A stretch of 64,000 nucleotides of DNA from Parasitella parasitica NRRL 2501 (lineage: Eukaryota; Fungi; Mucoromycota): positions 1 through 64,000 of the forward strand of contig MU619321.1 in assembly GCA_025201805.1 (NCBI GenBank), written 5' to 3'. Shown piece by piece: positions 6,021 to 59,626 of this stretch. A model generated the notes under the pieces. The model ran no database searches, was not told the origin of the DNA, and worked only from the letters and a program-made list of their open reading frames with translations. The translations under genes were made by a program, and so were the position numbers. Numbering within the stretch: the stretch's first letter is position 1; the number at the start of each line of letters is the position of its first letter.

Positions 6021-8909
6021 TTATTTACTTGATGATGTTGATGGAGATGGTGGCAATAGCAGCGAATGTGTGTTTGATATTGCCACACCTTTTTTGACTT
6101 TTAGTAAGCCATCAAAAGACTTGACGAAATGTTTAGGACTTGTTAAATCAATCGAGTTTGTACATGTATAATCTATCATTTTAGGATCCTCCAGGAGCAT
6201 AGAGAAATGTTTAGGAACCTATAATATAGACGGTAATATAAGTACATTACGGTACTATGTCGGATTTAGCGTGCATACTTTGAAGAATCTTTCATAGTAC
6301 TGGATCATTGTAGAAATAACCCATATCTCACCATGACATGTCGAAATATCCATTAAATCGTATGTTTGCTGCTTTTTCTCCTGACTAGCATACAAGATGT
6401 TGGGTGTTATCACCCGAGCAAGGTTTTCGAAATCCATCTTGTTAACGGCAGAGTGCTGAGCCACCCAGTGTAAAAGAGCCAAGATGGTCAGCAGTATATC
6501 CCTATTAGGTTTAGGCAGTATGCAAACAGCATAATGGATTATATTCAATGCTCCTATTAGCGTTGTTGCTTTGCTAGACATGATGAATAGTTTGTATAAC
6601 TTGAAGCTGAGGAGTGGTTCCGGCAATTCCCTCAAAAATCGCTTTATGAATGCAGCCAGCTGTATACTGGGCAGGTTTCTGAAAAAGTCGGCCCAATTTT
6701 GACGGTTTGGCTGCGAATCAAGTGCTTCGCACATTTCTTTGAGGCCCCGGATGTTGCCATTTTTTCGAAAAATGCCTTCTGTGGTGATCCCCTGATCGAT
6801 GAGTGCAATTATACAGTCTTGCAAGAAACTAGGCACCAGCGAATTCGGTGAAAAGCATGAATCGACAACAGGACACTCGCTCTTCCATTTCTCAAATGAG
6901 CTTGAACAAGAGGATGCTTGAGATTTAAGCGATCCGCTGCTGAGATTGTACAGCGAAACTCCAATTTTTTTTTCAAAAGTGGCAAGTGATGGCAACGGTG
7001 GTGGCGGACACTCTGCAGTAGGAGTCAGTATATGTGTCTTGAGTTTGCCCCATAAAGATACCGCAGGCGATGATGGCTTCTTGCTCGATATGTTCAAAAG
7101 GTCTTCGAGTACAGGATCATCTACATGTGACTCGATGTGTAAAACAGCAATGTGACGAATGATGCAGTCTTGCTTAGGATCCAGTTCAGGCAACGCAATC
7201 GCAGTGCTGATTTGGTTGTTGGTAGTAGCTGTGCTCGCAGTAGGAGGTGAGAGTGGAGGCGTCGTATGGTATCGATTCAGCTGTTCTACATCAGGCAATG
7301 AGATGTACAGAGGCTGTGTAGTTGTGATGCTACTGTTAGCAGATGAATTCTTTCTGCGACTCGTTGTGAGTGCTCTTTTGAACGTCTCCATCCTGCTGAT
7401 GGTCCTTGTATTGCTTGCTGCACTGTTGGATTTTGATCTTGACAGAGTGTTTTCACTGATCATCTTTAGGTGGCTAGTGTTTTCAAGAGAAAGAGCAGGT
7501 TCTTGTTGATATTGATTTATCGTGGGTTTATATAATAGCGTTTCATCAGGACTTTTACCTAAATATAGGTTCATTATGTGTAACAAAAAGTGAACCATGA
7601 CATTTTTTTTTTCTTTACCTAGACCCAACGCAAGACAAAGTCGACTTGTAGTCATATCCAACAGTTGTATGCAATGATTCAAACAAGGTAGATTCAGTGA
7701 TTTCAAAATTTGTTTGTCAGAAAACAGAGCCAGCATATCATCGATAATATCAACTCGGATGCTCCGTTCCTATAAAGGGGGGTCAAGATGGTGGTGGTTG
7801 TTAATTAACTCTATATAATAATATTACCAGTATCATTGCCTGCTGCAGTCCAAGTCTCACAAGATGTCGAATATTTGTGGATATTTTATTGGCAATTTTA
7901 ACCCTGTTTTGTGTAGAATGTGGCAATTCGCATGTTGCGTCTATCAAAAGAACTAGCCAGTTGGTCAACGATTCGACATGCTTGACACACGATACTTGAG
8001 TGGCATATGCAAATAACAGATCCATCACACTAAACAGAACGTTGATCTGGATAAACAGTGATTGCCATGTACTTAAAAGTTGATCCGGATGATTGGATAT
8101 GGCAATATTTGATATTATACGAGATGATTCATCTTCAAACTCGCTTACTACATTCCATATTTTAAAGCGAAGATTTTCAACATTCTGCTGCATCAGCTCC
8201 AACTGTTGTCTATTTGTACAGTCATACGATAACTGCAGATCGGTCAATTGGACGAGATAATATTTTTTCATCATATAGCATTCCGTATGCCAATTTTCCA
8301 GCTCTTCACTCTGATCAAACACTGTCTGTCCGCACCCAAGACATGCTGTTCCTTTGATCAACGAGTAATGGTATCGGCAATAAGGTCGGCCGTTGTAGCT
8401 GTACAAAAATTGTTGCGATTGTTGCAGAAACGTCTTTTTGTCGCTAATAACACAACCAGGACATTTCAAGCATTGTGTGTGGTATTTCCGGTCGTCCATG
8501 ACTGAAAATTCATCGTTGTATATTGTGTCGTGACACGAATGGCATTTAAACTTTACATGTTGGTAGTAATCTTGTTGACACGAAATAAAATCCATCATGT
8601 CAATTGGGAGCAAATAGAACTTGTAAAGCACTGATAATTGGTAAAACCAGCAAGAAAAACAGGAAAAGAAAGGAGAGAGGCCGTCATTAATTTACTTGTA
8701 ATACATACGACGTCCTCGTGCTATTTTACTTTAGCCACAACAGAAATTGCTTCCGAGCGAAAAGCAAGATACCCAGGTTTCCAGGCATATGTGTAATCAC
8801 TTACACTGCATCTAAAACACTAGTGGTGATAAATGTTGCCAATTGGCCTTACTGTAGAAGGGTCTCCCCTTTGATATTTGATTTTGCAGCAATGACAACG
8901 ATAATACAT
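6021..8909 (-). CDS. LIM-domain Rho GTPase-activating protein (Lrg1/Rga1-like), spliced; 5' end uncertain
   Basis: RhoGAP motifs EGIFRKNGNIRGL, KRFLRELPEPLL and NKMDFENLARVITPNIL; LIM Cys/His patterns in 7801-8631; last exon ends with TAA at 6021; the putative first exon has an in-frame TAG. Confidence 0.85.
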
Positions 8910-9033: not shown

Positions 9034-11559
9034 TTAGCAAAAGCAGAAATTCCGAATAACAAACAAACAAACCTCGTCCGTTGGTGGTTTAGGATTGCTT
9101 AATGTCATGAGAGCTTCCTCGTTCAACGGCAAATGGACCCGCTTGCGCTTTGATCTGGTTCTTGACTTGGACGGCTTATCGATAGGTACAATCATTTGCT
9201 GGATGTAGGGAACATACTCCATCATAATTATTTGCTCGTTTGGCTGAGACACTTGTCGGAAAGGCAATAATCGTTCAATTGCTTCCCTGCAAGCGCCATA
9301 GTGAATAGTGCTGGCATCACATAGTTCATCCCAATGGCTCTCTTCATCCATGATCCATTCAACACTACAATTGTTCAACACTGTAGTAATACATTGCATC
9401 TCCTTATTGATGTGCTTGTGCGGGTTATCTTCATCATCTTCGACACACAGTGTTGTATAACCATTCAGCTGGTCCTGGCCACTTTCCTGCACCATCGTGC
9501 CGCGCTCTTTCCACTGTAGCCATGTGTCCAGGAACGCATTGTTCTCTAAAATCCTCTCAATGTCGCTCAAGTCGGCCGTATCTTCTTTCTTGACATACCC
9601 ATCCAATTGCTGGTAAGATCGACCCAAGCGAAATGTATCAATGGCAATTCTGGAGGGAGTACATCTTGACTTGGTCTCGACCATGTCCATATTCCTGCTT
9701 ATTCCTAGATAATGTCCAAATATACCTTGTCCAGCATACAGTTCGAGTGTCTGTATTAGTTGTCGGATGTCCCTTCCTAAAAATGCGACCAGGCAAACCA
9801 GATCCGCTGGATCAACTGTATATCCTTCAGTAAAACACATCAACCACAGATACGCCAACAATTCATTTTCGGTCGGAGGTCTCATATCAATGATAGCCTG
9901 CAATGACATGTTCTCGACTGGCACTTGCTTTGCATCTATGACATTGCCTGTATTAGCATTTAAGAAGCATAAACATAACAATGCTGTTTTACCATTGCAT
10001 GTCATTATGATTGGCCGTTTACTATTCTGCGACAATTCAACCACTGATGCCCAAAATCCCTTGTCTTCTTCAAAAAGTATGTCAACTTCCTCTAATAGAA
10101 TCAAACTTTGTTTGGTTGGTGGTGACGATACGGGTAGTGCAGAGGGCGTCTTTTTTTTCACTAAAAAATCCTTCAACATTGGTTTTGTGGTGGTAGTTGT
10201 CGTTAAATATGGCGATCGAAGGCTAGGATTCAGTTTCTTTTTTTTTTTCGTCTTTGTAGCTGTGCTGCTGCTGGTGTATTGTTTTTCCAAAAACAAGGAT
10301 GATGTCGATGATGTTGATGCTGACGATGCATTGCCAAACGCAACTAAATGGCTCTTGGTCATTTCGCCTACTGCAGACATGATATCCCTGCCCGACCTTC
10401 TCGACCCCGCGTTGATTTCAAATACTTGGTAATCCATCTGTTCTGCTATAGTGTACACAGATGCAGTTTTACCAATCCCATGATCGCCCACCAAGAGTAT
10501 AATATTTGATCGCATCGATTCCTTTTTTAGTTCTTTTTTGCTGCTGGGGCCGATCATAAAGTCTTGGTCGTTGTCGTCCTCGAACAAAGTTAAGCTTCTC
10601 AAAAACGTCTCTTCATCGTCAAAATCCATGTCGTGTTGCATTACAAGCTTTTTGTGCTTCTTTTTATGGCGCTTCTTTGAATTGTCGGCTGAAAAAGTAG
10701 GTGCTGACAGCGGCTCAACTCTCATTTGATGCAGCCAGTCTTTGATGTATCGATAATTGTGTCTTTCGCCCAGTAGCCCATCTAGATGTTGTGGTCTGTA
10801 CTTTTCGTTCCATTGCTTATTGATGTTGTTGGCACGGCAATTTTTTTCAAAAATGGATTCCAGTAGCATCACACAAGAGGAGAAGTTTTGCCAGTTGGGG
10901 AAATAATTGTCAAGTAAGGCTTCCACCTCATCCTGCTTTGATACTTGTGACGGAACTTTGACGTATCCGTTGCAGCTGTTTCTGCTGTTGCGGTTCTTTC
11001 TAGTATGTTTGCACTGTCGGAAAAACTCAAGCTGATGATTCTTGACATATTGCTGTATGTCAAATGTTGTGGGTTTTCGACATTTGATTAAATTGCTAGA
11101 CCTAGCTTCAAATATCCTATCCGTAATATGGCCGTGGCCAAAGATTTGGCGATTCATTCTGGAGAATTCATGGTCGTTCCTTTGCTTCTTCTTTTGTGCT
11201 GAATGTCCATTGATTTTCTCGTAGTCTTCCTTTTCCTGGTACTCTAATGCATCCGAGTAAAACTTTGGTTTTGCGCTTGGAACATAATAAGGTGTAGAGC
11301 TTTCTCCTTTTTTTATGTAGCCATCAAAAGATGGTGCCATTTTGTTGCGGTCGTGCTTTTGCTCTTGTTCTTGTGCTCGTTGCTGCTGAAGTCTGGTTTT
11401 TCCAAGTGTTATTAGTGGAGGAGAGAGCGTGTGCACAGGCGTTGCAACTGTTGAAATTAGTCTATTTGGGTCATCAGGTATAGGTGTGGGTGGCGGGCTA
11501 CTTTTGTGTGGCTTTCTAGGTTGGAAGAATGGATGTACGGCTTGTTTTGGGTTACTCAT
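9034..11559 (-). CDS. ELG1: Elg1/ATAD5 RFC-like clamp unloader (AAA+)
   Basis: KYRP box, Walker A GDHGIGKT, VFEINAGSRRSG, LILLEEVDILFEEDKGFW, SKRPIIMTCN; probable 57-nt in-frame intron at 9936-9992. Confidence 0.85.
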   Translation of the reverse strand: MSNPKQAVHPFFQPRKPHKSSPPPTPIPDDPNRLISTVATPVHTLSPPLITLGKTRLQQQRAQEQEQKHDRNKMAPSFDGYIKKGESSTPYYVPSAKPKFYSDALEYQEKEDYEKINGHSAQKKKQRNDHEFSRMNRQIFGHGHITDRIFEARSSNLIKCRKPTTFDIQQYVKNHQLEFFRQCKHTRKNRNSRNSCNGYVKVPSQVSKQDEVEALLDNYFPNWQNFSSCVMLLESIFEKNCRANNINKQWNEKYRPQHLDGLLGERHNYRYIKDWLHQMRVEPLSAPTFSADNSKKRHKKKHKKLVMQHDMDFDDEETFLRSLTLFEDDNDQDFMIGPSSKKELKKESMRSNIILLVGDHGIGKTASVYTIAEQMDYQVFEINAGSRRSGRDIMSAVGEMTKSHLVAFGNASSASTSSTSSLFLEKQYTSSSTATKTKKKKKLNPSLRSPYLTTTTTTKPMLKDFLVKKKTPSALPVSSPPTKQSLILLEEVDILFEEDKGFWASVVELSQNSKRPIIMTCNGKTALLCLCFLNANTGNVIDAKQVPVENMSLQAIIDMRPPTENELLAYLWLMCFTEGYTVDPADLVCLVAFLGRDIRQLIQTLELYAGQGIFGHYLGISRNMDMVETKSRCTPSRIAIDTFRLGRSYQQLDGYVKKEDTADLSDIERILENNAFLDTWLQWKERGTMVQESGQDQLNGYTTLCVEDDEDNPHKHINKEMQCITTVLNNCSVEWIMDEESHWDELCDASTIHYGACREAIERLLPFRQVSQPNEQIIMMEYVPYIQQMIVPIDKPSKSRTRSKRKRVHLPLNEEALMTLSNPKPPTDEVCLFVIRNFCFC

Positions 11560-52809: not shown

Positions 52810-54125
52810 GTGTATCTGATAAAAGGGCAAAGAAGCGGCAAAATGTAAAGTTGAAGATATAAATGTGGATGTCTTGAATTGATGACTGCAATTAGAATAT
52901 GCGACTAATTTGGTATTATGTCGTACACAGAGACGTAGAAAAGAGAGGAAAAATGGAAGAAGAGGAGAGAAGGCAGCGCCAAATGTTAAGAACCCAAAAA
53001 ACCATTAAAAAAGTTTAATTGATAAAGTAAAATGGTTATTAAACCCGGCTAGTGTGACTCTAGCGTGCTGTTTAGGAGACACGAGAAAAGCAGACAGATC
53101 CAAATCGTGCGTTATCCTCATTATATCCTGAATGACATTGCACTAGACAATTGTATTTCTAATTGAATTAGTAGACATGTTTAAGAGAGTGCGCTAGCTT
53201 TCATCGTTTAGAGGTTCCTCCTTGTTTTCTTTTTATTTGTAGTAGCAGTAGCAAGAAATATGCAGCCGAACGGCTGCCAAAATACCGAAATGTTGGCTCA
53301 AAGGACCTTTAGAGTGCACTATCGAGTGCTGGCTCTCTATCCCGTTATTAGACAATCTCTATCTAAATTTTTTATTTCAGTTTTAACTTGGTACAAGTGG
53401 GATCAAATGTCCATCGATTTCAAGGTATAACAAAGTTACGGTATTTCAATCGGTCCTGGGTGCATATTCAAGTATATAGAACCTACAAATGTAAGTATAT
53501 CGTTATATAAAAGCCAACGTAATTTTCAAATGCGTGCAGTTTGCGTTTGGTTTAATAGCATGAAACTACTAATATATTAGAAAGAGTAAAGCTTATTGTT
53601 TTTCAGTCATAACCAACGGGTTCCTTAGCGGATCAAATAAATCAAGGAACGCTAAACGGAGAAAACAAACGTGCAGACCGTATTTATGGTATTTCTCAAA
53701 TAGGAGGCAAGAGCAAGGAGCGTATGGAAAGCTTTATAAAATTGTATGAGTGCACAACACATATGAACACTATCATCTAAACAGTTTATTTTTACAAAAC
53801 GCGTCAATCTTTCCGTTTTAAAGCAGTGAGCGCCAAGATTATTGATTGTTATATTAAATAACAGCGTTACACAAAAGCACAGACAAAAAGGACTTCCTTT
53901 TCTCCATGTAGAATGTCAACATGCGTCTTACTGTGCTTCCACTCTCAATTTACCGGATGTTTGAAAACACTACCCGCTTTTTTAGATAATTTTGGACACT
54001 TGTGTGAAGTTAAATTGCCCAAAAGAATAAAACTAATTTGGCCAAGCGTTTGAAGCTAATATGTCCAACATTTTGAAAATAAATTGTCCACTTTTAAGAA
54101 AATAATTTGACCAAATATTAAAATG

Positions 54126-54410
54126 ATTACAAAGGTTCTTTATTCAAGAATTTAGGGCACACATCAATCGAGTGCTGGATGAAATTTTGTATGTGTACAA
54201 CAGGAACATCCTCGCTGTTTTCAATTACTCTTGAAGAAAGTATTTCTGTATCTATCAATTCACTTCTTCTGATCCGGTCCTTCGGCGCTTTCCAAAACAT
54301 CTCGATAGGATTGATTTCAAGCGAATAAGGAGGAACGTATAATGGTAGACAACCCCTCTCTCAGATGATGGGGTCAACAGCGTCAGGAGAATGAATCATC
54401 ATGTTATTAT
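54126..54410 (-). pseudogene. Tc1/IS630-type transposase C-terminal fragment (left arm)
   Basis: IHSPDAVDPII*ERGCLPLYVPPYSLEINPIEMFWK...NKEPL*. Confidence 0.85.
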
Positions 54411-55057
54411 GTAGTGCCCATATGAAAGATAATGTCGTAATGTGCCTTTTCGAGTCAATAGTTGCAATGATGGCAATGTTTTCGATTTAATTTCAATGGT
54501 TGATCTTTATCACATACAGCAATTATATTTGTCTATGATTCGAATGAGATGAAATGCTGGATAACGCAGTTTTCGTTGATTATACATAGCATGATTCTTT
54601 CCAATATAATATTGTTTGAACTATCATTGAATGCACACACATCTACTTGCCTGCCAAACCTCACTCAAGGACGTACCAACTGTGAGTGAGGTACTACAAC
54701 TTTGCTAGCAAATCAGCGATTCTAATAGATTTATCAATTTACGCATAGCAATCTCAATAAGGTCTACAGTTCAATATAATGACATTAATAGTGAAATATT
54801 GCATTACTAAAGGCAGTGTACAGCTCATTCTGCCACAGGCTTGGTTTGCTATTAAAACAATTTAGCATCTGGCTAATACTTATATAAAGACCATGTGTAT
54901 CAGCTTGATCAATACTTCATCATCATCTGATCTTGTCAGTAATTTTATTCAAAGTGCACTATGTTAATTATTTTTTGAATGATAACAAAGATGACTATTC
55001 TATAATTGATAATAATGATTTCTGTATAATTTGTATAATAAAATGCGACAGATTCAT

Positions 55058-58000
55058 TCAATTTTCACTTTTAGCTTTGTATCTCCAAGTTGGAGCCTGT
55101 CTTGCTTTGAGGGAAGGCAGTGGTTCATCCTGGTCTTCATCTCCTTGCATTTTTCTTTTCATGCTTTTCTTTATTTTCTTCTTATCATTAAGTGTTTGTT
55201 TGATTATATCTGCTGCGTTTAATGTGTAGTGCTAAAATTCAAAATATATTAGTATTAGGTTTATCATTTTCGTTTCTTCTCATTTAACCTTTAAATCAAA
55301 GATATCTTCAATGATAGCTTTACAGTGTTTCTTGAGTTCGGGAACCGTCGATGGTAGAATGTATAATTTGATAGAGTTGGCAGCGTACAAATTATTATCA
55401 ACAAGGTTTACAGATATGGTGTTTGTTTCTAGGCCTAAACATATTAAATATTTAGTCTTGTAATAAAATGTCAAAGAATAAAGCCAAAGCTTACCCATCA
55501 TGATATGAACATTGACCACATTTAAGAGGCTGCATTTTCTTCATTTACATTCAAACTCATTACTTTGTCACAAATAATCTTTGCTTCTACTAGTAATTTG
55601 CTTCGATCGGTTATAATTCTCTCAAGGCCAGCATAAGGTGCGAACTCAACAGCACATACAGGGTATTCAGCATTATCGCACAACAGCACAAGCTTTGCAT
55701 CTAATTTAAAGATGGTATTTCCATCATCACCAGTAGCCAGTCTCTTTTCTCCCCTATGTATATGTAAGCTAATTTTGTTCGTAGACATAAACTACACACG
55801 AAATTTACCAGCGAATGTATATTCCAGTGCTGTAAAAGAGAACTTCAAATATATCAGCCCAGATTTTGATCATGACATCTGCTTCTGATGGCGTTGGCTT
55901 TGAGAGGGTGAATATTGAGTTATGCGTAATCATCTTATCAATGCTAAAAAAAAATAGGTTGTCAATCATTCAAGAAATGGTTTTTATAATAACTAGCTGA
56001 CCTGCTCGCTTCGCTCACGACGGCCATCGTCGCCCTACCGGGAGCTCAATCTTTTGATAAGTGCTAATCAGATATTCAATGCTCTTTTATTGTTGTTTAT
56101 CTATAACTTAAAATATATTGTTAGACAGAAATAAAAATATAGATGTAGTAACGCACAATAGGAAAAAAACGTAAAAATCAGTAGAGTTATTTAAATACTT
56201 CATGGAATACAATATTATCGGTGTATGATCCAGTATAGTTTTTGGTAGTTGAGGTATTTCTATGCAGGAGAATTTTGATTGAAGATAGCTGCTTAATGCG
56301 CGAGAAAGCAACATATAACTGGCCATGTGAGAAAAAGACCAAGAAAGTCGAGTGTTGAGCCTTGATGGTCATGGTGAATACCGGTCTAACAGACAATTAG
56401 CAATCAACTCAGGACAGTACAAAGAGAAATCGGGGTTTGCACTGGTGCCTCCATTTTTCTCTATGCCCACATGCGTGCTTGACAATGGCGACAGATGCTG
56501 TTCCTTCCACCAAGATCATGGCGTTTGGTGAAAGAGGGTGTACTTCTTCTAGCCATGTTATGAGTATTGTTGTGTATTAATTTGGCACCCAATCTACTGG
56601 TAGATCGCAAATGACTTTCTTGTCCACAGCTTGAACAAATACGTCTGCTGGTTGTTGCATCATTAACGCTGATTGTTTCTGTTTGCTGATCTACTTTCAT
56701 AGTTTCAGATTGAGATCCCAGTTTATACAAAGAGTTCGATTATGATTGTAAAGTGAAAACAAATTTGAGTCATACGATTAGCAATGTTGTTAGCACAATG
56801 ACGATAAGAAGATCGATGATGGCCTATAACACCACAGCTCCCGCAAGTGTTAGTATTAGCACGGGTGTTATTGAGGCAAAGCCTGCTTGCAGAACGCGAA
56901 TGGCCTTCTTGACCACAGCTTGAGCAGATTCTAATAGCAAGCACTCTGTGTTTGTAGTAATAAAAAGTGTCAACATATTTGTATTAAACAAAACAGAGTG
57001 TGCAGCTTAAAAAGTCGCCTTTGCTGGTTAGACCATGTCCAATTTCGAAAGATTCAAGCTTTTTCGCCCGAATTTCGACATTATTCACTTTGTTTAGAAA
57101 GTTTTGTTTCATAATTAATGTACACGACCATGTTTAGAAAGTTTTGTTTCATACGCACATATTTTACTTAAAATTTTCTGACGCGTTAAAGTATTTTTAA
57201 TTAGTTTCTGAAATTGAGGATGTACTTGGCTCAACGCCGACTTCTCGAAATTTAACAAACTGGAATGGAACTGAAAAAGCCAACTAAAGCATTTGTTAAC
57301 TCCATTTCTTCTTGGTTTAGGTTTGTTTTGCTTTATTCTTGAGCTTCAAGCGACTTTAATGCGACTGTTTTTTTTACGAAGCGTGTAAAAAATTTGCAGA
57401 CTCCATTTTTTTAATAATATAGAATATAAACTTTCATAACGCTTACTACTTCATACCCTATTTTTTCATTAAATCTGGATGCCTTTCGCTGATATTCTTT
57501 CGCTTTCCAATAGCATTCTTCCATATTTTGAGGGTTCTATCATAGCGTTTGTTATACATTTAACACAACTAAATGTTTGTGCTTGATACATACATTGAAC
57601 ATTCTATTGATTTTCTGCAATACCGGTCTGCATTTAACTAAGCCATCATTGTTTGGAGCTGTTGCAAATAAGGATTTCATCTGTGACCAATCATCTTTTG
57701 AGAATAGCATATGTTGTCTGGTCAAAGATCCATGCGTTAAATCAATACTACAATTCAAGCCACAGCTTTGTCAAAAAAGAAATCAGTATTATTTTTGGTT
57801 GTTAAAGTCAACTGTCCAAACTTACTCTACAAGTGCGATGTCAGAAGGAGGTAATGACCTGTAGTTCGTTTGTTTCTTCATCGCTTCACGCTTAATAATT
57901 GTTCCCACCGACAACTCGTTGTTTATTTTTATGTTGTCCTCATTAATATACTATAAAAATATCAAAATTTTAATTTGCATTGAAAATAATATTTATAAAA

Positions 58001-58600
58001 TGTGTTTACTCGTTCGATTTCCTCTATCCTTTTATTGATTTCCTCAGCAGACTCCTCTATAGAATTGGAAGCTAATGCTTTTTTTTTGTTAACCTCCTCA
58101 AGGAAATTTGTTGCTGTGAGGTTACTAAATATCGCTCCTTGGAAAGTTCTGTTTTCTAAGCTTTGTAAATATTTTTTTTCGTTCTAAGCAAAGCATACAT
58201 AAAGAAGACTAATGAGTAATAGTGGAGACATGTTAGTAAATTGAAGAGTACCTCTTTATTCATTTTGGTTTTAAACGATTACTACACTGCTTTTGCAGTT
58301 TTAGTGATGTATAATCTAATTTTATTTTTCTAAGTATTTTTGTCCGTGTGAATTCGTCTGATGTTCGTCCATTCACAATTTGTTGAATCAAATCTTTTCA
58401 GGCATAGCTATCTCTGATGTTGGTGTTTTCTTAGTGATAACCTGCCATCTCCATGACAGTAAACTGGATGTCAAGAATGAAATTGTGATGGATAGACTCG
58501 GATCTTTTGTTTCTTGGGAGAACATTGATAGGAGACAGCTATACCTACCTAGGTTTTACTTTTTCTATAATGAAGGAGCTTAATCTTTTGATGGTTGGAA
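55058..58600 (-). pseudogene. Spliced cargo gene, putative PD-(D/E)XK restriction-endonuclease-fold protein, decayed
   Basis: Exons read GLNCSIDL, SEADVMIKIWADIFEVLF...IRW|GEK, FKLDAKLVL...VCAVEFA...ITDRSKLLVEAK; frameshift near 55522 and stops in the 5' exons; fold assignment is by motif pattern only. Confidence 0.55.
55993..57423 (-). mobile_element. Internally deleted Helitron (1.43 kb)
   Basis: 5' TCTATATTA, 3' GC-rich hairpin region then CTAG|T; PIF1 motifs VRPVFTMTIKAQ and FSHGQLYVAFSR; RHDLG...CRHCQARMW zinc finger; three CxxCG..(G/S)H knuckles. Confidence 0.85.
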
Positions 58601-58701
58601 AGATGGCTTGAGCTGACTGTCCGCAATATCTGGGGAGTGCCTCCAGCCTTCATTGTAACTAAAAGCAGGCAGCTGTTTGATAGGAGATAGTTATACATAT
58701 A

Positions 58702-58983
58702 GATAGTGCCCCGATCTATTATCCTGATGCTGTTGACCCCATCATCTAAGAGAGGGGTTGTCTACCATTATACGTTCCTCCTTATTCGCTTGAAATCAAT
58801 CCTATCGAGATGTTTTGGAAAGCGCCGAAGGACCGGATCAGAAGAAGTGAATTGATAGATACAGAAATACTTTCTTCAAGAGTAATTGAAAACAGCGAGG
58901 ATGTTCCTGTTGTACACATACAAAATTTCATCCAGCACTCGATTGATGTGTGCCCTAAATTCTTGAATAAAGAACCTTTGTAA
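58702..58983 (+). pseudogene. Tc1/IS630-type DD34E transposase C-terminal fragment (right arm)
   Basis: DSAPIY...NPIE with 34 residues between D and E; in-frame TAA. Confidence 0.85.
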
Positions 58984-59626
58984 TCATTTTAATATTTGGT
59001 CAAATTATTTTCTTAAAAGTGGACAATTTATTTTCAAAATGTTGGACATATTAGCTTCAAACGCTTGGCCAAATTAGTTTTATTCTTTTGGGCAATTTAA
59101 CTTCACACAAGTGTCCAAAATTATCTAAAAAAGCGGGCAGTGTTTTCAAACATCCGGTAAATTGAGAGTGGAAGCACAGTACAAGCATTTAGTGGTCATT
59201 TCAACCTGTATCAAAGTTGAAAGATAAAATAATAGACCAATTTTATACTATAAATGCGAATCTAGATTCTTTGGTATTTACAGACAAAAATTATTAGATA
59301 TGCATGTAAAGGATGATCAGCTTTGATTGAATTAAAGTCAACTTCGACTGATTTTATTCAAGTGAGCCTAGTATTTGTTCAAAAAGGATAATTTGATGGT
59401 ATGAAAGTATGTTTTATTCAGCTATTAGCTCATTTCCTCAAAACATGCGATTACGTGTATCCCAGGTAAAACTGTATGAAGTAAAGGATTCTGGTATTTT
59501 TTTTTTTTTTTTTTTTTTTTGGAATTAATATTAATAGTAAATAGTGTTAATATATAAATAGTGTCTTTACATTTGTACAATAAGAAAAAGAAAGGTGGGA
59601 GGGAATATATATATATATTTTCTTCA

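What the first reader, a model, noticed from the sequence alone, without database searches (positions are those of the whole stretch)
53931..59179. Cargo-carrying DNA transposon whose long TIRs are two inverted copies of a dead Tc1 transposase 3' end
Seen: TA on both flanks; 458-bp arms with only 3 mismatches. Each arm holds the C-terminal DD34E coding region plus the element end. Both arms share the same defects (a stop at the same codon, SLEINPIE instead of the usual SPxLNPIE). Between them lies about 4.3 kb of non-Tc1 sequence containing a multi-exon gene. Established: Tc1/mariner elements duplicate TA and can be mobilised in trans through their ends. Inference: this is a Pack-type or composite vector built from a single element end, which could carry an intron-containing gene around the genome.
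Basis: partly seen in the sequence, partly recalled or inferred. Interest (0 to 1): 0.85.

Follow-up and report, generated by a model that had tools for sequence, protein, structure and literature searches.

The report
Gene-carrying Tc1 transposon with duplicated end
This is a real 5.25-kb transposase-less Tc1-type transposon: both long arms are copies of the same dead transposase end, it carries a now-broken nuclease-like gene, and it has moved as one unit; this is an unusual variant of a known kind of element.

Summary
Arms 53931-54397 and 58713-59179 match at 461 of 467 bases, with TA outside both, and share the same in-frame stop.

Each arm is a normal family inverted repeat plus about 270 bp of DD34E transposase 3' coding sequence. 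Ordinary family copies are about 1.7 kb with 100-156-bp repeats.

The interior is not one intact multi-exon gene. It holds:
- a 370-bp spacer;
- a decayed gene of a ~600-aa Mucorales family with a restriction-endonuclease-like domain;
- a nested 1.45-kb Helitron-like repeat that splits that gene;
- about 310 bp more Tc1 sequence continuous with the right arm.

The composite reading is largely supported:
- The orthologous intergenic region in three relatives lacks both arms and cargo.
- A metagenome contig has the same arm-cargo junction beside a different host gene.
- An old half-copy lies on contig 103.

On that metagenome contig the element is 90-94% identical to the window, while the adjacent host gene matches at only 65% of third codon positions. 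This hints at horizontal transfer. Thirteen derived changes shared by both arms show arm-to-arm gene conversion.

Limits: no clean single-TA empty site was found (about 0.3 kb is missing there), there is one complete copy in this genome, and the cargo is dead.

It is a new variant of a known kind and moderately interesting. Another first-stage note (s1-787538) had already flagged the same cargo stretch.

The parts
53929..53930 (.). TA dinucleotide outside the left terminus (Tc1-type target duplication)
   Evidence: Read directly. All family copies examined are TA-flanked.
53931..54100 (+). Left arm, outer part. It equals the family's normal terminal inverted repeat: a conserved terminus (CTGTGCTTCCACTCTCAATTTACC) plus an array of ~23-bp subrepeats.
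   Evidence: the terminal ~45 bp is nearly identical to the termini of other copies; normal repeats are 100-156 bp; same-strand ~23-bp subrepeats at 54012-54114.
54127..54397 (-). Left arm, inner part. It is the dead C-terminal coding remnant of a DD34E (Pfam DDE_3) transposase, read towards the left terminus, and it ends abruptly at the second-D codon.
   Evidence: tblastn to residues 347-439 of the L017 transposase gives 55% identity, with an internal stop; homology to other copies stops at 54397/54398.
54398..54767 (.). Spacer of unknown origin between the left arm and the cargo. It is conserved in relatives' copies of the element.
   Evidence: no paralogue in the genome except an 87-bp match on C98; collinear in L077 and L080.
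54768..55980 (-). 3' part of the cargo pseudogene: the C-terminal restriction-endonuclease-like domain of a ~600-aa Mucorales protein family.
   Evidence: P0002 residues 332-435 map to 55815-55504 and residues 444-499 to 55414-55187, with stops; paralogues on C133, C46 and C103; family search and fold search.
55981..57430 (-). Nested Helitron-like non-autonomous repeat. It has a 3' CTAG preceded by a GC-rich hairpin at the 55981 side, carries a PIF1-helicase C-terminal remnant and zinc-knuckle ORFs, and was inserted at A|T without a target duplication.
   Evidence: at least 40 copies at 81-98% identity; the insertion is precisely absent in C103, X8, X19 and L080. The filled and empty junctions were read.
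57431..58440 (-). 5' part of the cargo pseudogene.
   Evidence: P0002 residues 166-237 map to 57938-57663 with three stops. The start near 58440 is extrapolated from protein length.: ~69% identical paralogue on C103.
58400..58712 (+). Extra Tc1 remnant continuous with the right arm (about transposase residues 300-346, including the second catalytic D in IDSAPIY). It is interrupted by a 152-bp segment at 58540-58677 bounded by 23-bp direct repeats.
   Evidence: homology to L006 and L014 at the DNA and tblastx level; tblastn from 58693; direct repeat D5.
58713..59179 (+). Right arm: the transposase C-terminal remnant (plus strand) followed by the terminal inverted repeat. It is 98.7% identical to the left arm.
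59180..59181 (.). TA dinucleotide outside the right terminus. It aligns with a TA in front of CAAG in relative L085.

Best explanation
The stretch 53931-59179 is a non-autonomous derivative of a resident Tc1-like (DD34E, DDE_3) family. Its two 467-bp arms are both the 3' end of a dead copy: the normal ~150-170-bp inverted repeat plus about 270 bp of C-terminal coding sequence. Between the arms lies a captured gene of a ~600-aa Mucorales family with a restriction-endonuclease-like C-terminal domain.

Shown:
- The right arm is the original, because Tc1 homology continues inward from it.
- The left arm is the inverted copy.
- The whole block is absent from the orthologous site in three relatives, and the same block occurs beside different host DNA in another organism.
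- The two arms have been homogenised by gene conversion.
- A Helitron-like element later split the cargo gene, which also carries stops.

Inferred:
- The block was mobilised in trans by the family's transposase, which would bind the conserved terminal sites in both arms and integrate at TA.
- The doubled 3' end arose in one of two ways. One is gap repair that copied the wrong end of a sister copy through the shared inverted repeat. The other is two sibling copies in inverted orientation that lost their inner halves.
- The element has probably also passed between Mucorales lineages horizontally.

Today this copy is a decaying relic rather than a working gene vector.
For: Structure:
- Arms and TA.
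- Arm identity as a DDE_3/DD34E C-terminus.
- Normal copies are 1.4-1.7 kb with 100-156-bp repeats.
- No other copy in the genome is more than 83% identical to the arms.
- Independent contigs of run X4 reproduce all four junctions with no mismatch, and the arm contig has double depth.

Polarity of the arms:
- Tc1 homology continues inward only on the right, through IDSAPIY and the L006/L014 matches.

Mobility:
- The gene order GPI2, Rua1-like gene, site, F-box/WD40 gene is conserved in L084, L085 and L086/L087.
- In those relatives 460-850 bp lies where the window has the 5.25-kb element, with anchors up to 53929 and from 59182.
- ENA contig L077 is collinear with 53930-55978 across the arm/interior junction and then continues into a MAPEG gene. 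The counterpart of that gene in this genome is on contig C83, with no element there.
- C103 holds a ~70-80% identical right half that ends at a TA-flanked terminus.

Trans-mobilisation:
- Termini are conserved across the family.
- C16:35237-36376 is an uninterrupted 380-aa transposase inside a TA-flanked 1.64-kb copy.

Concerted evolution:
- At 13 sites both arms share a derived state against L077 and nine outgroup copies. At 11 sites L077 is derived, and at 6 sites the arms differ.

Cargo:
-.
Against: - No base-exact empty site was found. Relatives L085 and L086 carry a conserved ~300-340-bp block between the two flanks that the window lacks. The event here was therefore not a simple TA insertion, or a flank deletion came before or after it.
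- Only one complete copy exists in this genome.
- No relative's contig shows both arms around the cargo, because short-read contigs break in the arms.
- The L077 flank reads GA rather than TA at the terminus.
- The relatives with an empty locus are distant (about 77% identical in genes), so loss in their lineage is not formally excluded.
- Transposase activity on these arms is untested.
Confidence: 0.7

Rival explanations
1. Two independent, unrelated Tc1 insertions happen to bracket a resident host gene. The block never moved as a unit.
For: Every Tc1 end abuts TA, so TA on both sides does not by itself link the two arms. Tc1-like copies are abundant, with at least 117 matches.
Against: The arms are 98.7% identical to each other but at most 83% identical to any other copy, and they share the same stop codon. 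The orthologous site in three relatives lacks the cargo as well as the arms. The same arm/cargo junction occurs beside a different host gene in L077.
Confidence: 0.04
2. The block arrived by a route that did not involve the transposase, such as double-strand-break repair or ectopic recombination copying a donor locus. In this view the TA-flanked termini are inherited from the donor or are coincidental.
For: About 0.3 kb of conserved intergenic sequence is replaced or missing at the site, which a plain cut-and-paste insertion does not produce.
Against: Homology with relatives' flanks ends exactly at the two element termini. The right-hand TA plus CAAG aligns with TA plus CAAG in L085. In L077 homology with the window also ends exactly at the terminus. 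A transposon-end-adjacent deletion explains the missing block equally well.
Confidence: 0.1
3. This is not a capture. The ~600-aa nuclease-like gene is a regular second gene of a Tc1 lineage, or is itself a mobile unit that nests in Tc1 copies, and the window copy is a rearranged member.
For: A distinct subfamily member lies inside another 5.3-kb Tc1-like shell together with a transposase C-terminal ORF on C146. A cargo paralogue abuts a C16-type terminus on C46. About 5 of roughly 24 family loci lie within 6 kb of Tc1 sequence. Mariner elements carrying endonuclease genes are described (PMC3627910).
Against: Intact family members in four other Mucorales assemblies are mostly outside any Tc1 shell. 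In metagenome contig L075 the cargo unit (54648-58275) has no arms. Most loci in this genome, including the intact one on C20, are not near Tc1. No copy has both a full transposase and this gene.
Confidence: 0.12
4. The inverted repeat is an assembly artefact.
For: Long, near-perfect inverted repeats can be assembly artefacts. Short-read contigs cannot phase the interior between identical arms.
Against: In run X4 the four junction contigs have no mismatch and the arm contig has double depth. An independent metagenome contig (L077) spans flank, the whole left arm and the interior. Relatives X8, X19 and L080 share the inner junction.
Confidence: 0.02

Closest known systems
Transposase-less Tc1/mariner elements that carry a passenger gene (Fanzor1-only Mariner elements such as PUl-4; virus-borne Mariner elements with endonuclease and methyltransferase genes; Bao & Jurka 2013, PMC3627910)
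   Same: Both have family-type inverted repeats and TA duplications, a non-transposase gene inside and no transposase of their own (for the paper; here). An earlier scan note reports a dead Fanzor in a Tc1/mariner shell in this same genome.
   Different: The passenger here belongs to an undescribed ~600-aa family with a restriction-endonuclease-like domain, not Fanzor. Both arms derive from the same 3' end and include dead transposase coding sequence. The arms are about three times the family's normal repeat length.
Pack-type transposons (Pack-MULE, Pack-CACTA): non-autonomous inverted-repeat elements that capture host gene DNA (my own knowledge)
   Same: It is a non-autonomous element with family termini, carries captured host-type gene sequence, and would be mobilised in trans.
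   Different: Pack elements usually carry gene fragments, often several, and occur in many copies. Here one nearly whole gene was carried, there is one complete copy per genome, and the superfamily is Tc1/mariner, where such capture is rarely reported.
Bacterial composite transposons (Tn5/Tn10 type: two insertion-sequence copies in inverted orientation around cargo; my own knowledge)
   Same: Two inverted copies of the same mobile-element sequence bracket the cargo, and only the outer ends are used.
   Different: The arms are truncated 3' ends with no inner termini and no working transposase, so neither arm can move alone.
Mos1 mariner constructs with two 3' ends, reported as better substrates than the natural 5'/3' pair (Auge-Gouillou et al. 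2001; recalled from memory, not checked here)
   Same: Both ends are the 3' end of the parent element.
   Different: That is an engineered construct tested in vitro. This one is natural and its activity is untested.
Palindrome or inverted-repeat arms kept alike by gene conversion (Y-chromosome palindromes, plastid inverted repeats; my own knowledge)
   Same: Derived substitutions are shared by both arms: 13 shared against 6 private.
   Different: The scale is 467 bp inside a transposon.

Membership tests
Tc1/mariner (IS630-Tc1-mariner) superfamily, non-autonomous member | TA target-site duplication flanking the termini | tested here: met
   TA lies at 53929-53930 and 59180-59181. The 20-odd family termini examined are TA-flanked. 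Caveat: no single-TA empty site was recovered.
Tc1/mariner (IS630-Tc1-mariner) superfamily, non-autonomous member | Terminal inverted repeats shared with copies that encode the transposase | tested here: met
   The first 28-45 bp are nearly identical to the termini of L007, L011, L004, L015 and others. The first 14 bp are identical to the intact C16 copy.
Tc1/mariner (IS630-Tc1-mariner) superfamily, non-autonomous member | DDE/D transposase of the DD34E type in the family | tested here: met
   Family ORFs hit Pfam DDE_3 with E-values from 3e-13 to 6e-25. There are 34 residues between the second D and the E in L017 and in the window's right copy (my count). The window copy itself has only dead C-terminal remnants.
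Tc1/mariner (IS630-Tc1-mariner) superfamily, non-autonomous member | Evidence of movement (presence/absence, different flanks) | tested here: met
   The element is absent at the syntenic site in L084, L085 and L086/L087. In L077 it has a different flank. Excision or integration activity was not testable with these tools.
Pack-type transposon | Non-autonomous inverted-repeat element whose interior is captured host gene DNA unrelated to the transposase | tested here: met
   The interior carries a gene of a family that mostly lies outside Tc1 shells.
Pack-type transposon | Multiple copies, or several captures, within a genome | tested here: not met
   There is one complete copy plus one old half-copy on C103.
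Composite transposon (two complete mobile elements around cargo) | Each arm is a complete element with both of its own ends | tested here: not met
   The arms are 467-bp 3' ends. Only two family termini occur in the whole window.
Helitron (for the nested 55981-57430 repeat) | 3' CTRR end preceded by a hairpin; insertion between A and T without a target duplication | tested here: met
   CTAG and a GC-rich palindrome lie at the 55981 side. The filled and empty junctions show A|T with no duplication.
Helitron (for the nested 55981-57430 repeat) | 5' TC start and a Rep/helicase protein | tested here: inconclusive
   The 5' end reads TTC. Only a PIF1-like helicase C-terminal remnant and zinc-knuckle ORFs are present, so at best it is a non-autonomous derivative.
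PD-(D/E)XK (restriction-endonuclease-like) nuclease superfamily, for the cargo protein's C-terminal domain | Restriction-endonuclease-like alpha-beta core fold | tested here: inconclusive
   The AlphaFold model of the domain has pLDDT 88. Most of the top 25 VIA matches are restriction-endonuclease-fold proteins (BpuSI Z 6.7, DrdV, EcoRI, TT1808, HsdR, NucC, Cas4), but every Z is below 8. Foldseek E-values are above 0.1. There is no Pfam hit.
PD-(D/E)XK (restriction-endonuclease-like) nuclease superfamily, for the cargo protein's C-terminal domain | Catalytic D ... (D/E)xK motif | tested here: inconclusive
   The family consensus is GFKIDxR ... ExA ... K. E57, K66, D70 and K73 are nearly invariant. 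I did not map them onto an active site.

The most novel reading that the evidence does not exclude
The composite is a natural gene shuttle that has crossed between Mucorales genera. The window's genome appears to be Parasitella parasitica, which my own knowledge says is a mycoparasite that fuses with other Mucorales, and that could supply the route. Copies 90-96% identical sit in organisms whose adjacent or orthologous host genes are far more diverged. The doubled 3' end, kept uniform by gene conversion, may be what makes it a good substrate for the family's transposase.
Probability: 0.3. Interest if true: 0.7.

Novelty: new variant of a known kind. Interest (0 to 1): 0.5.

Why it matters
Tc1/mariner elements are usually minimal and rarely shown to carry host-type genes. 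Here a natural derivative bounded by two copies of the same end carried a nearly whole 2-kb gene. There is evidence that the block moved as a unit, that its arms evolve in concert, and that it may have crossed between fungal lineages. If the horizontal spread is confirmed, it would be a eukaryotic counterpart of a bacterial composite transposon and a concrete route for gene exchange among Mucorales. It would also offer a simple test of whether two 3' ends make a better substrate. The copy in this window is dead, so its effect on the host today is probably nil.

Tried and rejected
- I looked for the missing 5' two-thirds of the transposase in the interior with tblastn and tblastx, using two family transposases. 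Nothing was found beyond 58693 on the right or 54408 on the left.
- I looked for a second complete copy, or other paired arms with the same or different cargo, in this genome. None was found.
- I first read C46 as a copy of the same composite. Its terminus is of the C16 subtype and its junction differs, so it may be an independent association.
- I asked whether the cargo family is generally carried in Tc1 shells. Loci around four intact homologues in other assemblies say mostly not. In L072 the gene does lie between two Tc1 copies in direct orientation, which is not conclusive.
- Pfam found nothing for the cargo proteins. Foldseek against the PDB gave no significant match for the full-length model.
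- Rfam found nothing in 53500-59600.
- I looked for a base-exact empty site. The left flank aligns up to 53929 and the right flank from 59182 (L085) or 59221 (L086). The relatives hold an extra conserved ~0.3-kb block that is absent from the whole window.
- Laid contigs of X8 and X19 gave no depth on the window's flanks. This is compatible with a different location or a distant genome, but the tool warns that a hole proves nothing.
- X7 is only guessed to be RNA, so I make no expression claim.
- Stretches returned as N (withheld) inside several Tc1 copies were left alone.
- I built no joined, spliced model of the cargo gene. It was searched as single open pieces and through homologues.

Full report
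**Observation.** The inverted repeat is real and far beyond chance. The repeat finder reports arms 53929-54397 and 58713-59181: 469 nt including the flanking TA, 99% complementary, with 4315 nt between them. Reading both ends shows TA followed by CTGTGCTTCCAC on each side. I count 461 of 467 identical positions. Both arms translate to the C-terminus of a Tc1-type transposase with the same in-frame stop and the same SLEINPIE variant. They align to residues 347-439 of an intact family protein at 55% identity.

**The family.** The genome is 32.8 Mb in 450 contigs. It holds at least 46 DNA matches to the arm, none above 83% identity apart from the two arms themselves. It holds at least 117 protein-level matches to the family transposase.
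- Ordinary copies are 1.4-1.7 kb with inverted repeats of 100-156 bp.
- They encode a Pfam DDE_3 protein.
- In L017 and in the window's right copy, 34 residues separate the second D from the E, so the family is DD34E.
- All termini examined are TA-flanked and share the first 28-45 bases with the window's arms.
- One copy, C16:35237-36376, has an uninterrupted 380-residue frame inside a TA-flanked 1.64-kb element.

Each 467-bp arm is therefore the normal repeat of about 170 bp, which includes ~23-bp subrepeats, plus about 270 bp of 3' coding sequence. That extension is not a family trait.

**Which arm is the copy.** Homology to other family members stops at 54397/54398 on the left. On the right it continues inward through the second catalytic D (IDSAPIY at 58699) and, at the DNA level, to about 58400. 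It is interrupted there by a 152-bp segment bounded by 23-bp direct repeats. The right arm is therefore part of a longer Tc1 remnant, and the left arm is an inverted copy of its last 467 bp.

**The interior.**
- *Nested repeat.* Bases 55981-57430 are a high-copy repeat, with at least 40 copies at 81-98% identity. It carries a PIF1-helicase C-terminal remnant and zinc-knuckle ORFs on the minus strand. It has a 3' CTAG preceded by a GC-rich hairpin and was inserted at A|T without a duplication. It is precisely absent from the paralogue on C103 and from the copies in X8, X19 and L080. It is a late Helitron-like insertion.
- *Cargo gene.* The rest of the interior is low-copy. A 221-residue open frame in a distant paralogue on C146 found 277 relatives in the representative library. 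Many are ~600-residue proteins with this domain at residues 350-550, and none has a Pfam hit. Mapping those proteins back on the window shows the cargo gene on the minus strand. Residues 166-237 map to 57938-57663, and residues 332-499 map to 55815-55187. The gene has several stops and is split by the Helitron-like insertion near residue 300. It is a pseudogene, not an intact multi-exon gene.
- *Fold of the domain.* The domain folds with high confidence, pLDDT 88. Its best structural matches are nearly all restriction-endonuclease-fold proteins, but only at Z 3.5-6.7. I call it restriction-endonuclease-like with moderate support. This agrees with another first-stage note on the same stretch.
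- *Method note.* I did not build a joined, spliced model. The gene was searched as single open pieces and through homologues.

**Is the assembly right?** Contigs of an independent run (X4) reproduce the junctions flank-to-left-arm, left-arm-to-interior, interior-to-right-arm and right-arm-to-flank without a mismatch. The collapsed arm contig has twice the single-copy depth. A metagenome contig from another organism (L077) runs from its flank through the whole left arm into the interior. Short contigs cannot phase the interior's orientation between identical arms. That does not affect the conclusions.

**Did it move as a unit?** Three lines of evidence say yes.
1. *Empty orthologous locus.* The gene order around the element (GPI2, a Rua1-like gene, the site, an F-box/WD40 gene) is kept in three relatives: L084, L085 and L086/L087. 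Their intergenic region has 460-850 bp where the window has 5.25 kb, and it contains neither arms nor cargo. Their homology to the window's left flank runs up to 53929. In L085, homology to the right flank starts at 59182, where TA plus CAAG aligns with TA plus CAAG.
2. *Different flank elsewhere.* L077 is collinear with 53930-55978 across the arm/interior junction. Substitution identity is 92-94% in the arm and 90-93% in the interior. The contig then continues into a MAPEG gene whose only counterpart in this genome lies on contig C83, where there is no element.
3. *An old half-copy.* Contig C103 carries a ~70-80% identical right half: the cargo 5' part, the Tc1 remnant and the arm. It ends at a TA-flanked terminus and is truncated on the other side by a LINE-like ORF.

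The caveats are real. Relatives L085 and L086 share a conserved ~300-340-bp block between the two flanks that is absent from the whole window. The site is therefore not a clean single-TA empty site. A flank deletion before, during or after insertion is needed. The relatives with an empty locus are also distant, at about 77% identity in genes.

**Concerted evolution of the arms.** The left-arm breakpoint is shared with L077, so the duplication predates the split of the two copies. Yet the arms differ from each other at 6 sites and from L077 at 31-33 sites. I polarised the differences with nine other family copies as outgroups. At 13 sites both arms share a derived state, at 11 sites L077 is derived, and 5 sites are unresolved. 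Shared derived changes in both arms are not expected if they evolved independently. Arm-to-arm gene conversion is the simplest reading.

**A hint of horizontal transfer.** On the same L077 contig the host MAPEG gene is 77% identical in protein to its counterpart here and only 65% identical at third codon positions. The non-coding element next to it is 90-94% identical. Names given by sources indicate that the window's genome is a JGI assembly labelled Parasitella parasitica: P0184 and P0152 lie on the same 148-kb contig. Another assembly with the same species label has only a 68% identical orthologue. Run X19, which carries that species label, still holds the cargo at about 93% identity but shows nothing on the flanks. 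These discordances fit transfer between lineages. They rest on one host gene and on laid contigs, so I rate this at about 0.3-0.4.

**Mechanism.**
- *Shown:* the structure, the polarity of the arms, absence at the syntenic site, a different flank elsewhere, homogenised arms, and the late Helitron-like insertion.
- *Inferred:* mobilisation in trans by the family transposase acting on the conserved terminal sites of both arms, with integration at TA.
- *Origin of the doubled 3' end:* one possibility is repair synthesis that used the wrong end of a sister copy through the shared inverted repeat and ran on into coding sequence. The other is two sibling copies in inverted orientation that lost their inner halves. 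I cannot separate these two.

**Rivals.** Independent insertions, a route without the transposase, the gene being a regular Tc1 passenger, and an assembly artefact are weighed in the rival section. Only the second and third keep appreciable weight.

**Comparison with what is known.** Transposase-less Mariner elements carrying Fanzor1, and Mariner elements carrying endonuclease and methyltransferase genes, all with TA duplications, are described (PMC3627910). A dead Fanzor in a Tc1/mariner shell was already noted in this genome. The present element differs in three ways:
- its passenger is an undescribed nuclease-like family;
- both arms come from the same 3' end and contain dead coding sequence;
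- there is evidence for concerted evolution and possible cross-lineage spread.

It works like a Pack-type or composite transposon but fails the copy-number feature of the former and the complete-arms feature of the latter. I class it as a new variant of a known kind, of moderate interest.

**Limits.**
- Withheld (N) stretches were not probed.
- No step needed referral.

Noticed in passing
G000: C46:211275-212366(+)/215668-216759(-); C128:46702/51178; C25:91328/96070; C29:16407/23826; C46:167120/175780; C66:63215/69852; C30:245320/249778; C87:122138/126689; C38:61740(-)/67025(+): At least nine pairs of Tc1-like transposase genes with equal scores lie in inverted orientation 3-8 kb apart. Most read inward. 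Long inverted duplications that include whole transposase genes therefore seem common in this genome. The C38 pair has at least 500 nt of perfect inverted repeat, but its centre is withheld (N).
   Followed up: partly
G000:C146:67088-72396 (L070:4089-9397): A 5.3-kb element is bounded by family-type TA-flanked termini (65-nt inverted repeat, 92%). It holds a 203-aa transposase C-terminal ORF, a 221-aa open frame of a different subfamily of the same cargo family, and a truncated copy of the same Helitron-like repeat inserted at a different point of that gene.
   Followed up: partly
window 53929/59182 compared with L085 (reverse strand 360-700) and L086 (reverse strand 9167-9470): Two relatives share a conserved ~300-340-bp intergenic block exactly where the window has the element. 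The block is absent from the whole window. This could be a deletion adjacent to a transposon end or an older deletion.
   Followed up: partly
window 55981-57430 and at least 40 other loci (L032-L050): This is a 1.45-kb Helitron-like repeat family at 81-98% identity. It has tandem CCHC-like zinc-knuckle ORFs and a PIF1-helicase C-terminal remnant. Two of the few cargo-family pseudogenes each carry one.
   Followed up: partly
(P0184, P0185): Two public assemblies labelled Parasitella parasitica have orthologues of the window's AAA+ gene at 97% and 68% identity. The 97% figure probably reflects the same genome with a gene-model gap. The 68% figure is as distant as Mucor species, so one label may cover two very different organisms.
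   Followed up: no
L072:2407-2531 and 7201-7325 (GCA_025331445.1): In another Mucorales assembly an intact 601-aa family member and a methyltransferase gene lie between two Tc1-like copies in direct orientation. The facing ends of those copies form a 125-bp inverted repeat at 97.6%.
   Followed up: partly
window 54960-55754: Run X7, only guessed to be RNA, has an error-free 678-nt contig over part of the cargo pseudogene and patchy cover elsewhere. The annotated 130-aa hypothetical protein (P0152) lies on this pseudogene.
   Followed up: no
L004, L011, L015, L020, L021, L024, L083: The central parts of several Tc1-like copies are returned as N (withheld by the operators). Their coding status could not be judged and was not probed.
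   Followed up: no
G000:C20:185542-186921: This is the best-preserved member of the cargo family in this genome: a 658-aa open frame without stops. It is not near any listed Tc1 match and is a candidate for functional study.
   Followed up: no
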